Of a stretch of 64,000 nucleotides of DNA, positions 15,701 through 21,594 are shown in pieces; the first letter of the stretch is position 1, and each line of letters starts with the position of its first letter. The notes below the pieces were generated by a model. The model had not been told where the DNA came from, searched no databases, and was given only the letters and a program-made list of their open reading frames with translations. The stretch is from Rebecca billardiae RCC1528 (Eukaryota; Protista; Haptophyta), in NCBI GenBank assembly GCA_965240325.2, contig OZ251246.1:1116001-1180000 (forward strand), in the 5' to 3' direction. A program made the position numbers and the translations under genes.

Positions 15701-16288
15701 GAAGAGGGGCTTGGGAAGTGAGCGCGCCGCCTAGCGCGCTCTGGGCGATGAAGCAGATGAGGTGGAATATATATATATATATATAATATATATTAACGAC
15801 GTGGTATGCAACGGGCAGGCGTCAGAGTCAGCAAGCTGTAGCAGCAGATCGAGCAGCAGAGACAAACACCAGGATCAGCGCTCCTCGCCGTCGTCCCCCC
15901 CCCTCATAGTCGCCCATCACTCCATCGCCGAGCGGAAGCTCGACGCACCGTCTATATATATTTAACGATATATTATATATATATATTATAATTATAAATA
16001 TACTTTATTGTATTATTTGTAATAATAATAATAATTTATTATTATTTATGGTCAGATCCGCCGTATGCAGATCGTCCGCCGGCCCGCGGCGGGTGCGCGC
16101 AGGCTGCCACCACCCGCCAGGCGACGGCAGACTTGCGGCGGGAGAGTGGGAGACGGCCCCGGGCCCGGCCCGGCGGCCGAAGTGCTCCTCTCTCAGTCTC
16201 TGCTCCGGCGAGACCGCGCGGTGAGACCGCCATGCCGATGGCTGCAGATGTGCGTGACTCGGAATGCTGTCAGATGTGCGCCGGCGAC

Positions 16289-19200
16289 TCAGACGCTCCA
16301 CGAGAACGCGGCGAGCGCGCCGAGCATCGCCTCGCGCGTCTTTGCGTTGAAGACGTCGATCGAGTCGTCGGGCGCGGCATCGGCGGCGCCCGCCTCCTCA
16401 GCGCCCTGCCCGGCCTGGAGGTTGTGCCGGGTGGGCCTGCCGCGCACCGAGCGGTGGAAGTGCTCGATGGCGACGAGCAGCGACGCGCGGTCGTTCTCGT
16501 CCGAGAGCCCGGCGCTGCGCACGTCGAACTCGGTGAGCAGCTTCTGCACGCGCGCGCGGTCGGTCGCGAGCGTCTGCATGAAGCGCTCGCGCTCGCGGCG
16601 CGGCAGCGTGAGCTGGAACGTGCCGCCCGGCTGCATCGAGTGTACGGCCTGCGGGCGGAGGGGGGCGCGCGCGCGCGGCGGGCGCGCGGACGGGTGCGGG
16701 CGGTTGTCGGCGCGCGCGCGCGCGGCGGCGGCGGCGGCGGCGGGTGCGCGGTGCGCGGGTGCGCGGCATGCAGGTGTGCGGGTGCGGGTGCGCGGCATGC
16801 AGGTGTGCGTGCGCGGGTGCGCGGCATGCAGGTGTGCGGGTGCGGGTGCGCGGGTGCGTGTGCGTGCGCGTGTGCGCGGTGCTTGGCCCCACCTCGTACA
16901 GGCACCACGCGCGCGTGAGGCACACGGGCGCGTCCCACGGGTCTATCACCATCACGACGTGGCCAATCAGCCGCTCGATCGGGCCGATGTGCAGCACCTC
17001 CGTCGCCTGCTCGCGCAGCCGCATGCAGAACTGGTCGACCCAGAAGAAGGTGCGGCGCGCGTCCAGCCGGTGCAGCTCGAGGTAGCACTGCAAAGACTCG
17101 ACCATGCGCGCAAACGAGCACGCGTGCGCGTGCGAGACAAAGATGGTGGCGCGGCCGGTGGCGGGGTGGCCGCCCGCGGTGGTCGTGTGCGCCACGCGCT
17201 CGCACAGCGAGTACGGCGAGTTGCCGATCAGCCCGAGCACCGTCTGCGCCGAGTCGTACGACGGCTGCTCGCGGTCCGGCACGTACATCTCCACAAACTC
17301 GAGCAGGAAGGCGAGCGAGACGCCGAGCTGCATGTGCGCGGGCACCTCGGGCGCGCCGGCGTGCGCGGTCGAGCCCGCCTTGCTGCTGCCGCCGCCGGCG
17401 GCGCCACCGACGACGACGTTGCCGTACGGCGTCGCCGGCACCCCCGCGCCGAGCGCCGCCGCCGCCGAGACGGGCTCGGTGCGCGAGGAGCGCTGCCGGC
17501 GCGCGGCCGCGACCGTGTGCACGAGCGGCCGCGCGACGGGGGCGAGCTCGGCGGCGAGCCGGAGGCAGAGGCGGCGGAAGGGCGGCTCGAACGAGACGCC
17601 GTTCATCGGCGTGAACGCGCCGATCTGCGTGCAGAGGCGCGCGGCGCGCGGCGCCGCGGTGGGAGGGGGCGGGTGCGCGCGGCCGAGCGGACGGCGCCAC
17701 AGCAGCAGCGGCAGCGGCGGGGGCAGCAGCGGCAGCAGCGGCAGCGGCGGCAGCGGCGGCAGCGGCGCGTGAGCACGGGCGAGTGCGCGCGCGCGGCGGG
17801 GGGCGAGGCGGCGCCGAGCGCTCGCGCACCTGCACGTAGCTGGCGACGTGCATGAGCGTGAACTGCACGAGGAACAGGCCGAAGCTGCGCGTCGGGTGCC
17901 ACGTCGCCCACGGAAAGAGCGCCCCTGTGAGCAGCAGCCCGACCGTGAGCAGCGCGGTCGCCTGCACGCGCGCGTTGAGCCGCAGCAGCAGCACGCCGGG
18001 CAGGTGGAGCAGCAGCGTGCGCACGCGGCGCGCGGTGAGCGCGGCGGCGATCGCGACGACCGCCGGCGTGAGGATGTACGTGAGGAACATCTTGAGCATG
18101 AAGAGCAGGAACGAGTCGCTCAGGTAGAAGGAGAGCGAGGTGACGAGGTCGAGCAGCAGCGTGCAGCACACAAACGCCAGCAGCAGCCGCCGGTACACGC
18201 CGCGCGCGAGGCGGAGGGAGGCGAGGCCGCCCGAGGACGCGGCCTGCGAGAAGTAGACTGCGGGCGGAGCGAGCGGGCGGGCGGGCGGGGGCACACGCCG
18301 GGGTGCGCGGGCCGCGCGGGACGCGATGCCGGCGTGTCGGCGCGCGGCGAGCGCCGTGCGCGCGCGCAAGCGCCTCAAGTTCGCCGCGCCGCGCCGCGCC
18401 GCGCCGCGCCGCGCCGCGCCGCGCCGCGCCGCGCACCGAGGAAGATGGCGCTGGTGACGTTGCCCAGCGCGAAGACGATGGTGAGCAGCAGCGCGCCCGT
18501 CGGGAAGTCGAGCACGCCGCGCCCCCAGTCCGGGTCCAGCGCGAGGTACACGGTGCGCACGCCGTTGGTGAGCAGCTCGACGCCCAGCAGCAGCTGCGGG
18601 ATGGACGCGCGCGGCCCGCCGTCGACGCGGACGAAGGTGTAGAGCCGCGCGGCGGCGAACTCGAGGCACGCGAGGGCCTGCAGCGTGAGCACCACCTGCA
18701 GCGCCGTGTACAGCGGCCCGTCGAAGTACGCCGCCCACAGGCTCGGCGTCGGCGCCACGCGCACGCTCAGGCGCGCGCCGCCGGCCGCCGCCTCGACGAG
18801 CGGCAGCAGCGCGCGCTGCGTCGCGTCCGCGGCGGGGAGCGCGAGGGAGCGCGTGTCGCCGACCGTGAAGTACTTCTGCGTGCGCCCCGGCGGCGCGTCG
18901 AACAGCCCCGCCGCGCCCGTGTTCACGTTGAGGAACGCGCGGCCGCCGAGGCTGGCGACCGCCCTGGCGTACAGCTCGAAGGAGCACGAGAGGTCGGGGT
19001 CGACGGCGAGCACGACCGCGCCGGCGAGCGCGCGCGTGCCGACGTAGCGCGGGGGGCACGAGCCCACGTCCCACTCCGCCGTCTTCGTGCACACCAGCGG
19101 GCCCTGCACGTCGAACGCGGCGGGCGCAAACTCGTACCGAGCGACGTCGTACGCGCGGCCGACGAGCCCCGACGGGCCGGCGAGCACGGCGAGCTGTGCG

Positions 19201-19298
19201 GCGGCGGGAGTGGCGCCGTGTAGGAGCGCCACGCACACCACGCCGCGCGCGAGCAGGCGCGGGGGGGCGCGGCGACGCCAAAACCGCGCCCGGCTCAT
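16289..19298 (-). CDS. Signal peptide - PA domain - 7TM - HET/TIR-like domain fusion protein
   Basis: Exons 19298-18437, 18257-17830, 17624-16893, 16648-16289 (793 aa, all GT-AG, frame-consistent). PA motif GAVVLAV..SCSFELYARAVASLGGRAFLNVN; seven hydrophobic helices; then ATIFVSHAH, FFWVDQFC, PWDAPVCLTRAWCLYE. Confidence 0.8.
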
Positions 19299-19815: not shown

Positions 19816-19955
19816 ACGGGGTGACCCTGGCTGGTACGCACCCAGCCCGCCTTGGCGTCCGGACTCCTGGCCTCCTCCGCCGCCAAGGCGGGGTGACCAC
19901 CCTTGCCTCGGCCTGGCTGGTACGCACCCAGCCGCCTTGGCGTCGGACTCCTTCC
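19816..19955. repeat. Tandem direct repeat (CCTGGCTGGTACGCACCCAGCC..CCTTGGCGT..GGACTCCT) x2
   Basis: Two near-identical copies differing by 1-nt duplications, lying just upstream of an AAATCATAGAAT motif. Confidence 0.75.
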
Positions 19956-20298
19956 TCGCGCCTCGGCCAAGGGCGGTTGCCTCGGCCATGCAGGCGCATG
20001 GGCGCGACTCGCTACCGGAAATCATAGAATGAGTATAGGGGTAAAGTACCCTCATGTCGAAATAGCGGCATGGGGGTCATATGTATCATATACGGCCCGC
20101 CATATATATACAAGCATGTACCATAGTATGCTCCCATATTGCGCGGGTACATTTCAAATAATAGAAGCTATGACGACTGTGATAATAGCGCCTTGCCGAC
20201 CCGCCGACCGCTTAACTGCTCACAGCCGGGGGGCAAGGGCACCTTGGCGTGCGCGCGGGAGGCCGGCCGGGTCGCGCAGAGCGGCGCGCGCGCACACG

Positions 20299-21594
20299 AT
20301 GCGCATGCGGCGAAACGGCTTCGACTGGCCGCCCGACCCCCTGCAGCTCGGCTCGTGGCTGCTCTTCGCTGCGTTTGTGTGCAGCTTTGCGCTGCTCGTG
20401 CTGCTCGGGCTGCCGCACGGCGCCTCGAGCGCCTTCGCCGCGCTGTACGGCGCGAGCGCGCTGGCGGTGCTGGTGATGGCGGCAGTGACGACCGCCTCCG
20501 ACGCGAGCGACCCCCACGTGCTCGCAGCGTGCCGGCCGGGCACTGCGCCGGACGCCGCGGCGGCGTCGGCGGGCGTGCCTGCGGCCGCTCAGAGCGCGCG
20601 GTGCGGCGGCTGGATGGGCGGCGGCGGCGGCGGCGGCGGCGAGCGAGGCGGCGGCGGCGGCGAGCTGAACTACTGCTACCTCTGCCAGCTCGAGGTGCAC
20701 AAGCGCTCGAAGCACTGCAAGGTGTGCCGCAAGTGCGTCGGCGTGTTTGACCACCACTGCGTGTGGCTGAACAACTGCATCGGCGCGTCCAACTACGGCC
20801 GCTTCCTGTGCACCATCTGGAGCACGCTCGCGTTCATGACGGTGCAGCTCGCGGGGGCGGTGGTCGTGCTCGCCGCGCTGCTCTCGAGCGACGAGGCCGT
20901 GTGGCGCGCCGTCCTCTGGCGCTTCACCGCGCGGCTAGACGGCGCCGCGCTGAGCGATGAGCCCGGCGGCGCGGGCTCGGCGCCGGCCGACGGCGCGGGT
21001 GCGTGGCCCGCGGTCGCACTCGGGCGGGTGCCGTACGCGGCGTTGGTTGGTGCGCGCGGCCGCGCGGGCGTCGAGCCCGGTCCGCCACGCGCGGCACACC
21101 GCCAGCGCGCGCCGAGCGCCCTCGCTCAGCCTCGGCCGCCTCGTCACCCTCGCCGCCCCCGCCGCCCCGCCGCCCCCGCCGCCCCCCCCGCCGCGCCGCG
21201 CGCGCGCCGTGCAGCTGTGCTGCTGCTGCTGAGTCTGCCCGCGTGGCTTCTGGTCGGGCAGCTGTGCGCTTTCCACGTCGACCTCGGCCGCAAGGGCATG
21301 ACCACGTACGACTACATCGTGCAGGAGCAGGTGCGCGCGCGTGCGCGCCCCGCTGCGCCGCCGCGCGGGCCCCGCCTGCCCTGCGCACCCTCGACGAGCA
21401 TGGCCGCACTCACCGCCCCCGCCCGCCGCCCGCCGCGCGTGGCGGGTCCGTCCGTCCGCCCGCTGATCCTCAGGTCCGGCTGAACGAGCGCACCGGACCG
21501 ACGGGGCTGGACGCGCTTCTCGAGAGAGCGCACGCGATGCTCGAGCGGGCCAAAGGGGGCGCCCAGCCGCCGTCGTACGGCTCAGCCGCGACCA

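What the first reader, a model, noticed from the sequence alone, without database searches (positions are those of the whole stretch)
16289..19298. Candidate new receptor class: PA-domain 7TM (GPCR-like) protein fused to a cytoplasmic HET/TIR-like domain
Seen: a spliced 793-aa gene that the ORF track splits over several frames. It has a signal peptide, a PA (protease-associated) ectodomain (~19180-18745), seven hydrophobic helices (~18720-17610), and a C-terminal domain with ATIFVSHAH, FFWVDQFC and LTRAWCLYE. Known: xSH/SY, WxD and R/SxWCxxE are hallmark motifs of TIR and fungal HET domains, where the Glu is the NADase catalytic residue. PA domains are ligand-binding ectodomains. GPCR-enzyme fusions (PIPK, AC, PDE, TKL) are described in oomycetes and some other protists. 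Inference: a signal peptide plus 7 TM puts PA outside and HET/TIR inside, giving a one-component, ligand-gated NAD+-cleaving or cell-death receptor, possibly for algal innate immunity. I do not know of this architecture being described.
Basis: partly seen in the sequence, partly recalled or inferred. Interest (0 to 1): 0.88.

Follow-up and report, generated by a model that had tools for sequence, protein, structure and literature searches.

The report
PA-7TM receptor with TIR/HET-like tail
This GC-rich haptophyte-type algal gene encodes one protein with an outside PA-like binding domain, a seven-helix GPCR-shaped membrane core and an inside domain shaped like the TIR/HET immune and cell-death modules. 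It is one of about 55 such genes in the genome, no paper I searched describes the design, and its function is untested.

Summary
On the minus strand, four exons (19298-18437, 18257-17830, 17624-16893, 16648-16289) joined by three GT-AG introns give a 793-aa protein. An 850-aa transcript-derived protein from a related alga (MMETSP) aligns colinearly across all three exon junctions, so this is one gene.

The protein has four parts:
- A signal peptide.
- A PA-like ectodomain. The sequence match is weak but recurs across the family.
- Seven helices with a GPCR fold (Z up to 19.4 to solved GPCRs, on a model of the closest full-length homologue).
- A 216-aa cytoplasmic domain with an invariant Glu in a WCLxE motif.

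The predicted fold of that last domain ranks TIR domains first, but only at Z 5-6.8. No Pfam TIR or HET model reaches its threshold, so it is a separate family in the TIR/HET superfamily, not a member of either.

At least 55 of 61 PA-7TM loci in this 72-Mb genome carry the same tail. Homologues in Diacronema lutheri are filed as hypothetical proteins. Ligand-triggered NADase or cell-death signalling is inferred and untested. No RNA run was listed for this genome.

The scan has already reported this family on at least eight other pieces of this genome, with the same reading. I rate it a new variant of known kinds (GPCR-enzyme fusions, TIR receptors).

The parts
16289..19298 (-). Whole CDS of the 793-aa PA-7TM-TIR/HET-like protein. 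Exons are 19298-18437, 18257-17830, 17624-16893 and 16648-16289 (stop included).
   Evidence: Spliced translation is open, and the GT-AG introns are 179/205/244 nt. It is colinear with transcript-derived P0151 across all junctions.
19197..19298 (-). Signal peptide, about residues 1-34.
   Evidence: Basic n-region, hydrophobic core, AAA|QL. Homologues have equivalent N-termini. Inferred; no predictor was run.
18723..19196 (-). PA-like ectodomain, residues 35-192, with two near-invariant Cys (CPPRY 81-85, SCSFE 104-108).
   Evidence: Pfam PA at E 0.008, below the cut-off. PA is the only recurrent Pfam hit in the family, 9/30 members, best 3e-4. Foldseek hit to the PA-bearing aminopeptidase 2ek8 at E 5.5e-3. 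Atlas neighbours are PA peptidases and RNF128. Conserved Cys pair.
17619..18716 (-). Seven-helix GPCR-fold membrane core, residues 195-432. It spans the end of exon 1, intron 1, exon 2, intron 2 and the first codons of exon 3.
   Evidence: Hydropathy. AF2 model of P0151:1-445 has pLDDT 89.8 and seven helices. Foldseek finds GPCRs of classes A/B/F at E ~1e-3. VIA-align gives Z 16-19.4 over 230-250 residues. Coordinates.
17352..17618 (-). Low-complexity cytoplasmic linker, residues 433-521.
   Evidence: Ala/Gly-rich. It is the least conserved region, 25% mean identity.
16460..17351 (-). C-terminal TIR/HET-like domain, residues 522-737. It has an N-terminal helical extension (522-588) and a core (589-737), and is interrupted by intron 3 (16649-16892).
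   Evidence: Family HMM match of 262.9 bits over residues 522-737. A homologue model has pLDDT 88.7. TIR domains top the fold searches.
16893..16895 (-). Codon of Glu674 (WCLYE), the candidate catalytic residue. It is the last codon of exon 3.
   Evidence: It is the only invariant column in 56 aligned domains. Coordinates. Equivalence to the TIR catalytic Glu is inferred from motif context, not from a residue-level superposition.
16292..16459 (-). C-terminal tail, residues 738-793, with a conserved end motif (FN.KTR.A.LGALA..SW).
   Evidence: The last 40 residues align to the C-terminus of P0151 and to several homologues. Role unknown.

Best explanation
The gene encodes a one-chain membrane receptor. 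A signal peptide and a disulfide-bearing PA-like domain face outside (or into a lumen). A seven-helix GPCR-fold core spans the membrane. After a flexible linker, a cytoplasmic domain of the TIR/HET superfamily follows, with the strictly conserved Glu of a (S/T)RxWCLxE motif. The likeliest mechanism is inferred, not shown: a ligand bound by the ectodomain or 7TM core changes the conformation or clustering of the receptor. This switches on the TIR-like domain, which acts as an N-glycosidase on NAD+ or a related nucleotide. The result is a signal molecule or NAD+ depletion. The roughly 55 deeply diverged paralogues would then form a repertoire for sensing non-self or environmental cues in a pavlovophyte-type haptophyte.
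For: Shown:
- One gene, with splice junctions confirmed by a homologous transcript.
- Seven helices and a GPCR fold.
- PA-like ectodomain.
- Positive-inside charge bias of 12 against 2.
- The C-domain model (pLDDT 88.7) finds TIR domains first in three fold searches: AbTir Z 6.8, SARM1 Z 6.5, and about 45 of 50 rows are TIR.
- The family profile's best PDB hit is the Paracoccus TIR protein 3h16 at E 0.05.
- HET and TIR_2 are the two commonest sub-threshold Pfam hits among members.
- Glu is invariant, and S, W.D, PW and R.WC are at least 90% conserved in 56 domains.
- 54 of 61 PA-7TM loci have the domain 0.9-4.8 kb downstream on the same strand, and one more shows a diverged copy.
- Distant homologues put the same domain in front of TPR arrays, as immune STAND/NLR-type proteins do with TIR and HET.

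Established knowledge: TIR NADases use a conserved Glu. HET is a remote TIR relative that is sufficient for cell death in fungi (PMC10197012). A divergent 'TeTIR' family with the Glu was recently shown to be an NADase (preprint 10.64898/2026.09.21.753143).
Against: - Fold Z-scores of 5-6.8 lie in the range the tool calls common for unrelated matches.
- No Pfam TIR or HET model passes its cut-off on the window protein or its relatives.
- hhalign against this genome's own TIR_2 domains gives 4.8% probability.
- The structures are of a 43%-identical homologue, not of the window protein.
- The ectodomain is not more variable than the rest (33% against 27-36% mean identity), so there is no classical immune-receptor signature.
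- No expression data exist for this gene.
- Many TIR domains are non-catalytic adaptors despite keeping similar motifs.
Confidence: 0.5

Rival explanations
1. Same architecture, but the TIR/HET-like domain is a non-enzymatic assembly module, as in Toll-like receptors and MyD88. Receptor clustering would recruit other proteins carrying the same domain, for example the soluble or TPR-fused copies in this genome, and so build a signalling complex.
For: MyD88, MAL, TRIF/TRAM and IL-1R-family TIR domains score as well as the enzymatic ones in the fold searches. Twelve loci carry the domain without PA-7TM, and some relatives have tandem copies or TPR arrays; these could be partners.
Against: Glu is invariant in all 56 domains, and the surrounding R.WC..E motif is at least 95% conserved. 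This is more typical of an active site than of an interface. The homodimer prediction gave no answer, which is no evidence either way.
Confidence: 0.2
2. The C-domain is an N-glycosidase of the wider TIR / nucleoside 2-deoxyribosyltransferase / MilB-DNPH clade. It acts on nucleosides or nucleotides other than NAD+, so the protein is a membrane-tethered metabolic or salvage enzyme rather than an immune trigger.
For: Nucleoside 2-deoxyribosyltransferases (1f8x, 6evs, 8rh3) and MilB (4ohr) appear among the fold hits at Z 4.3-5.8, within one unit of the TIR hits. That clade shares the catalytic Glu.
Against: The sequence motifs (F-V-S-H-A, W.D, WC..E) and the only sequence-level hits point to TIR and HET, not to the deoxyribosyltransferase family. 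A 55-member receptor-fused family is hard to reconcile with housekeeping salvage.
Confidence: 0.1
3. The PA-7TM part is not a ligand-gated sensor. It is an endomembrane cargo or sorting receptor, or an anchor, as in PA-TM-RING proteins or GPCR-fold proteins such as LYCHOS. The tail would act in trafficking or local regulation.
For: The atlas search finds RNF128-type PA-TM proteins as ectodomain neighbours. LYCHOS/GPR155 is among the 7TM hits at Z 16-17. No GPCR sequence family or motif was detected. The search for G-alpha in this genome was inconclusive.
Against: The best 7TM matches are signalling GPCRs over all seven helices. Fusion to a TIR-like effector in 55 paralogues fits signalling better than sorting.
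Confidence: 0.12
4. The fusion is a gene-model artefact: a 7TM gene and a separate downstream gene for the C-domain.
For: No RNA reads for this genome were available. GC-rich sequence gives long open frames in many frames, for example a 1003-codon open frame across the whole locus.
Against: A transcriptome-derived homologue is colinear across all junctions. Several paralogues encode PA-7TM and the C-domain in one uninterrupted frame (L003, L008, L010/L021). About 30 public proteins show the same order. There are 54-55 co-linear loci in this genome.
Confidence: 0.03

Closest known systems
TIR domains with NADase activity (SARM1, plant TIR-NLRs such as RUN1/RPP1, bacterial AbTir, ThsB)
   Same: Predicted flavodoxin-like fold. 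TIR domains top every fold search. There is an F-x-S-H/Y first-strand motif, a W.D second-strand motif, and a strand followed by a loop and a WC..E helix carrying an invariant Glu.
   Different: No Pfam TIR model reaches threshold, and the profile comparison with this genome's own TIR_2 domains is not significant. The domain has an extra ~65-residue N-terminal helical extension and a longer C-terminal helical part. Activity is untested.
Fungal HET domain (PF06985), cell-death module of heterokaryon incompatibility
   Same: The order and type of conserved blocks are parallel: S-H/Y block, W-x-D block, hydrophobic strand, R-x-W-x-x-x-E block. This comparison is from my memory of the HET motifs, supported by sub-threshold HET hits in 4 of 56 members (best E 2.5e-4) and in P0013. 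Like HET, the family is greatly expanded in one lineage (PMC10197012).
   Different: The HET model finds nothing in this genome and does not hit the window protein. HET is fungal and is not known fused to 7TM receptors.
GPCR-bigrams of oomycetes and other protists (GPCR-PIPK, -INPP, -AC, -PDE, -TKL)
   Same: A seven-helix GPCR-type N-terminal half with a C-terminal cytoplasmic catalytic-type domain in one chain. They form multi-copy families (PMC6033456).
   Different: The effector here is TIR/HET-like, which is not among the described types (no occurrence of TIR in that paper). This family also carries a PA-like ectodomain.
Toll-like / IL-1 receptors, and the membrane-anchored TIR proteins reported in Gephyrocapsa huxleyi
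   Same: Ectodomain outside, membrane span, TIR-type domain inside. [quoted passage not shown]
   Different: Those have one helix or unspecified helices and canonical Pfam TIR domains. Here the membrane part is a GPCR-fold 7TM, the ectodomain is PA-like, and the tail lies outside the Pfam TIR families.
PA-TM-RING proteins (RNF128/GRAIL, plant RMR) and PA-bearing peptidases
   Same: PA-type luminal or extracellular domain next to the membrane.
   Different: Those have one TM helix and a RING, or a peptidase body. Here there are seven helices and a TIR-like tail.
TeTIR domains (TEP1, NWD1/2)
   Same: A divergent, extended TIR-like domain missed by standard models, with a conserved Glu and experimentally shown NADase activity. 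It is associated with TPR or WD40 repeat proteins (preprint 10.64898/2026.09.21.753143).
   Different: TeTIR always sits directly upstream of a NACHT ATPase and has an RWG loop motif. Neither is present here. Relatedness was not tested.

Membership tests
TIR (Pfam TIR_2 PF13676 / TIR PF01582) | Match to the family HMM at or above the curated cut-off | tested here: not met
   No hit on the window's exons. 4 of 56 family members hit TIR_2 only below threshold, best E 0.006. TIR_2 hits in this genome lie at other loci. hhalign against those gives probability 4.8%.
TIR (Pfam TIR_2 PF13676 / TIR PF01582) | TIR-type flavodoxin-like fold | tested here: inconclusive
   The model of homologue P0151:487-746 (pLDDT 88.7) finds TIR domains first: Foldseek E 0.1-1, VIA-align Z 5-6.8, rmsd 2.6-3.5 over 91-115 residues. 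The ranking is consistent, but Z lies below the tool's confidence zone of 8.
TIR (Pfam TIR_2 PF13676 / TIR PF01582) | Conserved catalytic Glu on the helix after the third strand | tested here: inconclusive
   An invariant Glu (674 in the window protein) lies in a helix 17 residues after a conserved strand.
TIR (Pfam TIR_2 PF13676 / TIR PF01582) | NAD+ glycohydrolase or cyclase activity | not testable with these tools
   Needs an enzyme assay.
HET (PF06985) | Match to the family HMM at or above the 22.5-bit cut-off | tested here: not met
   No hit on the window protein. No hit in the whole genome, though the control genomes also gave none. Sub-threshold hits occur in 4 of 56 members (best E 2.5e-4) and in P0013 (15.2 bits).
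GPCR fold (7TM receptors) | Seven transmembrane helices with the N-terminus outside | tested here: met
   Seven helices in the AF2 model of the homologue. Seven hydrophobic segments and positive-inside bias in the window protein, plus a signal peptide and Cys-bearing ectodomain.
GPCR fold (7TM receptors) | Structural similarity to solved GPCRs over the whole bundle | tested here: met
   VIA-align Z 16-19.4 with 230-250 aligned residues; the top 50 rows are almost all GPCRs or GPCR-fold proteins. Foldseek probability 1.00, E ~1e-3.
GPCR fold (7TM receptors) | Membership of a described GPCR sequence family, or G-protein coupling | tested here: not met
   No Pfam 7TM family hit in the window protein or in 30 relatives. 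Coupling is not testable, and the G-alpha search in the genome was inconclusive.
PA domain (PF02225) | Match to the family HMM at or above the 23.9-bit cut-off | tested here: not met
   16.7 bits, E 0.008 on residues 64-138. 9 of 30 relatives hit PA, all below the cut-off, best E 3e-4.
PA domain (PF02225) | PA-type fold of the ectodomain | tested here: inconclusive
   Foldseek hit to PA-bearing aminopeptidase 2ek8 at E 5.5e-3 over 163 columns. Atlas neighbours are PA peptidases and RNF128 at TM 0.35-0.45 on the two-domain model. The ectodomain was not folded on its own.
GPCR-bigram (GPCR with C-terminal catalytic domain) | 7TM N-terminal half and cytoplasmic enzyme-type domain in one polypeptide | tested here: met
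   Single gene and colinear transcript homologue. The accessory domain type (TIR/HET-like) is not one of the described types.

The most novel reading that the evidence does not exclude
This is a previously undescribed class of eukaryotic innate-immune or allorecognition receptor. A GPCR-fold sensor directly gates a TIR/HET-superfamily NADase in the same chain, with no G protein and no NLR scaffold. It has expanded to about 55 specificities in pavlovophyte haptophytes and would link surface recognition of viruses, grazers or kin to NAD+-derived signalling or programmed cell death in marine algae.
Probability: 0.3. Interest if true: 0.85.

Novelty: new variant of a known kind. Interest (0 to 1): 0.68.

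Why it matters
TIR-type domains are the most widespread immune and cell-death enzymes known. So far they are seen behind single-pass receptors, in NLR/STAND proteins, or in bacterial defence operons. A GPCR-fold receptor carrying such a domain on its own tail would be a new way of wiring surface sensing to NAD+-based signalling. It would add a sixth effector type to the GPCR-enzyme fusions of protists. It would also give algal immunity research, where antiviral receptors are essentially unknown, a concrete family of about 55 genes to test. The key residue (Glu674) and the domain boundaries are defined well enough for a direct enzyme or toxicity assay.

Tried and rejected
- The word-index protein search with exon 2, using the long open frame as carrier, found nothing. 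With exon 3 it found only two Logan-derived proteins. The window's own protein is not in that database.
- RNA evidence: no sequencing run was listed for this locus.
- hhalign of the C-domain family (A1) against eight TIR_2 domains of this genome (A3) gave probability 4.8%, aligning only the first strand to the W.D region. hmmsearch of the A1 profile on those TIR_2 domains gave only the F-I-S-H-A-W motif. A sequence-level link to canonical TIR is therefore not proven.
- Homodimer prediction of the C-domain gave 'no answer' (score 0.00). It is no evidence either way.
- Viral contigs: a pattern scan with a close-family alignment (A4) and with two full-length proteins found no relative.
- UniRef's name 'RGS domain-containing protein' for the Diacronema homologue P0033 could not be reproduced with Pfam on the inter-domain regions.
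- The G-alpha search in the genome gave only partial, GTPase-core-like matches, one of them marginally over the cut-off. This is inconclusive for G-protein coupling.
- Region-wise identity among 16 full-length proteins shows no hypervariable ectodomain.
- The Atlas search by language-model features gave no informative named cluster.
- The tails of three of the six PA-7TM loci that lack the C-domain (L036, L039, L040) have no Pfam domain.
Full report
**1. The observation**

The minus strand between 19298 and 16289 carries an ATG, four coding segments and a TGA stop. Joining 19298-18437, 18257-17830, 17624-16893 and 16648-16289 gives 2,382 nt and an open 793-aa product. The three introns (179, 205, 244 nt) all start GT and end AG.

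The window is 58-81% G+C, so long open frames occur in several frames. One of 1003 codons runs across the whole locus. Open frames alone therefore prove nothing here.

Independent support comes from P0151, an 850-aa protein translated from an MMETSP transcriptome. It aligns with the model at 43% identity from residue 43 to 736 and again over the last 40 residues. The alignment runs straight through all three exon junctions. In addition, several paralogues in the same genome encode the N-terminal and C-terminal parts in one uninterrupted frame (L003, L008, L010/L021). The 793-aa single-gene model is therefore sound. No RNA run could be listed for this genome itself.

**2. Anatomy**

- **Residues 1-34** look like a signal peptide.
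- **Residues 35-192** give a sub-threshold Pfam PA match (E 0.008, 16.7 against 23.9 bits). PA is the only Pfam family that recurs among 30 relatives, in 9 members, best E 3e-4. Two Cys (CPPRY, SCSFE) are nearly invariant.
- **Residues 195-432** hold seven hydrophobic segments.

An AlphaFold2 model of P0151:1-445, built on a 30-sequence alignment, has pLDDT 89.8. It shows a mixed alpha/beta ectodomain followed by exactly seven long helices.

- Foldseek matches it to GPCRs of classes A, B and F (E about 1e-3, probability 1.00) and, for the ectodomain, to a PA-bearing aminopeptidase.
- VIA-align against 48,161 chains gives Z 16-19.4 over 230-250 residues. Almost every top row is a GPCR, above the tool's stated noise level for helical bundles.
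- Predicted-structure neighbours include a 532-aa PA+7TM cluster from Endomyxa (TM 0.71), PA peptidases and RNF128.

No GPCR sequence family is detected. The loops predicted to face inward carry 12 Arg/Lys, against 2 in the outward loops. Together with the signal peptide, this puts the PA-like domain outside and the C-terminus in the cytoplasm. This topology is inferred.

**3. The C-terminal domain**

Residues 522-737 match a profile built from 56 related domains over its full length (262.9 bits). The exon-4 part was not in that alignment, so its match is independent.

In the alignment the Glu of WCLxE is the only invariant column. The following are 90-98% conserved: A, F and S of the F-V-S-H-A block, W and D of W.D, G before the central strand, P-W and P of the DPWD.P loop, and R, W, C of R.WC.

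Pfam does not recognise the domain.

- The window's exons give no hit.
- Among the 56 members, the two commonest sub-threshold families are HET (4 members, best 2.5e-4) and TIR_2 (4 members, best 0.006).
- The profile's best hit in the PDB is the Paracoccus TIR protein 3h16 (E 0.05), aligned over the first strand and the W.D strand.

An AlphaFold2 model of P0151:487-746 (57% identical to the window's exon-3 domain piece in alignment A1) has pLDDT 88.7.

- Foldseek ranks plant, SARM1 and AbTir TIR domains first, at weak E-values of 0.1-1.
- The exhaustive VIA-align search puts TIR domains and the related nucleoside deoxyribosyltransferases at the top, at Z 5-6.1.
- The second look gives AbTir Z 6.8 (rmsd 2.6 over 91 residues) and SARM1 Z 6.5, and about 45 of 50 rows are TIR domains.

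These Z values are modest; it is the consistency of the ranking that carries weight. A profile-profile comparison with eight canonical TIR_2 domains of the same genome is not significant. The HET model finds nothing in this genome. TIR_2 finds at least ten loci, none of them at a PA-7TM locus.

My reading is that this is a separate, unnamed family within the TIR/HET superfamily. It has an N-terminal helical extension of about 65 residues and is not a member of either Pfam family.

**4. Family and distribution**

Six-frame searches of the 72-Mb, 41-contig assembly find 61 loci with the PA-7TM half and 66 with the C-domain. In 54 cases the C-domain lies 0.9-4.8 kb downstream on the same strand. 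A profile search adds one more diverged case. Six PA-7TM loci lack the domain; I scanned the tails of three of them and found no Pfam domain. Twelve loci have the domain without PA-7TM.

The exhaustive representative search finds 1,204 proteins at E <= 0.001. About 30 of the best 150 share the full architecture. Two of these are Diacronema lutheri proteins filed as 'hypothetical protein' (KAG8460825.1, KAG8458467.1), and others come from MMETSP or Logan assemblies. More distant relatives place the domain, sometimes in tandem, in front of TPR arrays. Predicted-structure neighbours at TM 0.8 are oomycete TPR proteins.

The organism is therefore most likely a pavlovophyte-type haptophyte, but not D. 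lutheri itself, since the best public match is only 63% identical.

Mean pairwise identity among 16 full-length proteins is 33% (ectodomain), 27% (7TM) and 36% (C-domain core). The ectodomain is not specially variable.

**5. Mechanism**

Shown: the chain order, the folds at the confidence levels above, the conserved residues and the family size.

Inferred: a ligand acting on the ectodomain or 7TM core alters receptor conformation or clustering. This activates the cytoplasmic domain, which uses Glu674 to cleave NAD+ or a related nucleotide.

The inference rests on established TIR enzymology, on the remote HET-TIR relationship and HET's cell-death activity (PMC10197012), and on the recent demonstration that another divergent, Pfam-invisible TIR-like family (TeTIR) is an NADase.

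The rivals are a non-catalytic adaptor role, a different N-glycosidase substrate, an endomembrane sorting or anchor role for PA-7TM, and a gene-model artefact. They are weighed in their own sections. Only the artefact is close to excluded.

**6. Comparison with what is known**

GPCR-enzyme fusions ('GPCR-bigrams') are described with PIPK, INPP, AC, PDE, TKL and an N-terminal aspartic protease. TIR does not occur in that paper (PMC6033456).

[quoted passage not shown] This is the closest published idea. It does not describe a GPCR-fold core, a PA ectodomain or this domain family.

Searches combining HET, TIR, seven-transmembrane, PA domain, haptophyte and protist found no description of the architecture.

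**7. Earlier notes of this scan**

At least eight other pieces of this genome were reported with the same architecture. Their follow-ups reached the same reading, including 'about 50 such genes'. My counts and fold searches agree with them independently. One note mentions a probable giant-virus carrier; my scans of viral contigs did not find one.

**8. Verdict**

The architectural interpretation is supported, and the functional interpretation is plausible but untested. I rate it a new variant of known kinds (GPCR-effector fusion; receptor with a TIR-type tail), built on an unnamed TIR/HET-superfamily domain.

Limits:
- The TIR-fold Z-scores are moderate.
- There are no transcript data for this gene.

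Noticed in passing
window 19903-21480 (+): Divergently oriented neighbour about 600 bp upstream of the receptor's ATG. Its open frame holds a DHHC palmitoyltransferase domain (Pfam E 6.9e-26).
   Followed up: partly
window 15990-16060: Short, extremely A+T-rich tract (ATAAATAATAATAAATTATTATT...) about 230 nt downstream of the receptor's stop codon, in a region otherwise 70-80% G+C. It may be a 3'-end or terminator signal, or a mobile-element scar.
   Followed up: no
window 18385-18436, 17700-17790, 16700-16890: Each of the three introns is largely simple repeat: (GGCGC)n in intron 1, (GCC/GCT)n in intron 2 and CACCCGCA-type units in intron 3.
   Followed up: no
window 16270-19281 (-): A 1003-codon open frame with no stop spans the whole locus in the frame of exon 2. 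This shows how misleading ORF lists are in this G+C-rich genome.
   Followed up: yes
L034-L037, L039, L040 (G000 C19:794000, C19:1026300, C22:900000, C21:475500, C17:177600, C29:1378600): Six PA-7TM paralogues have no detectable TIR/HET-like domain within about 5 kb downstream. The tails of three of them (L036, L039, L040) were scanned and match no Pfam family. They may be truncated or may carry other effectors.
   Followed up: partly
G000 C10:349526-349840 and C10:352362-352568 (+): A locus with the C-domain but without PA-7TM lies 3 kb upstream of a weak canonical TIR_2 match on the same strand. It may be a protein or cluster combining both TIR-type domains.
   Followed up: no
P0018, P0070, P0096, P0031, P0059 (public homologues): Distant relatives carry two or three tandem copies of the domain and/or long TPR_10/TPR_12 arrays. 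This is an NLR-like layout with no ATPase domain recognised by Pfam.
   Followed up: partly
L021 / L008 against P0036 / P0024: Two Logan-derived public proteins look the same as paralogues of this genome wherever their aligned or printed sequences overlap; P0036 comes from run ERR14847151. Reads of this organism or a very close strain may therefore be public, although no run was listed for the window's locus.
   Followed up: partly
G000, many paralogues (one search matches ending at query 148-150): In many paralogues the match to exon 3 stops at or just before the Glu codon, as in the window gene. This suggests a shared intron position directly after the candidate catalytic residue. The closest paralogue (C7) instead has its last intron 17 codons earlier and lacks intron 2.
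   Followed up: partly
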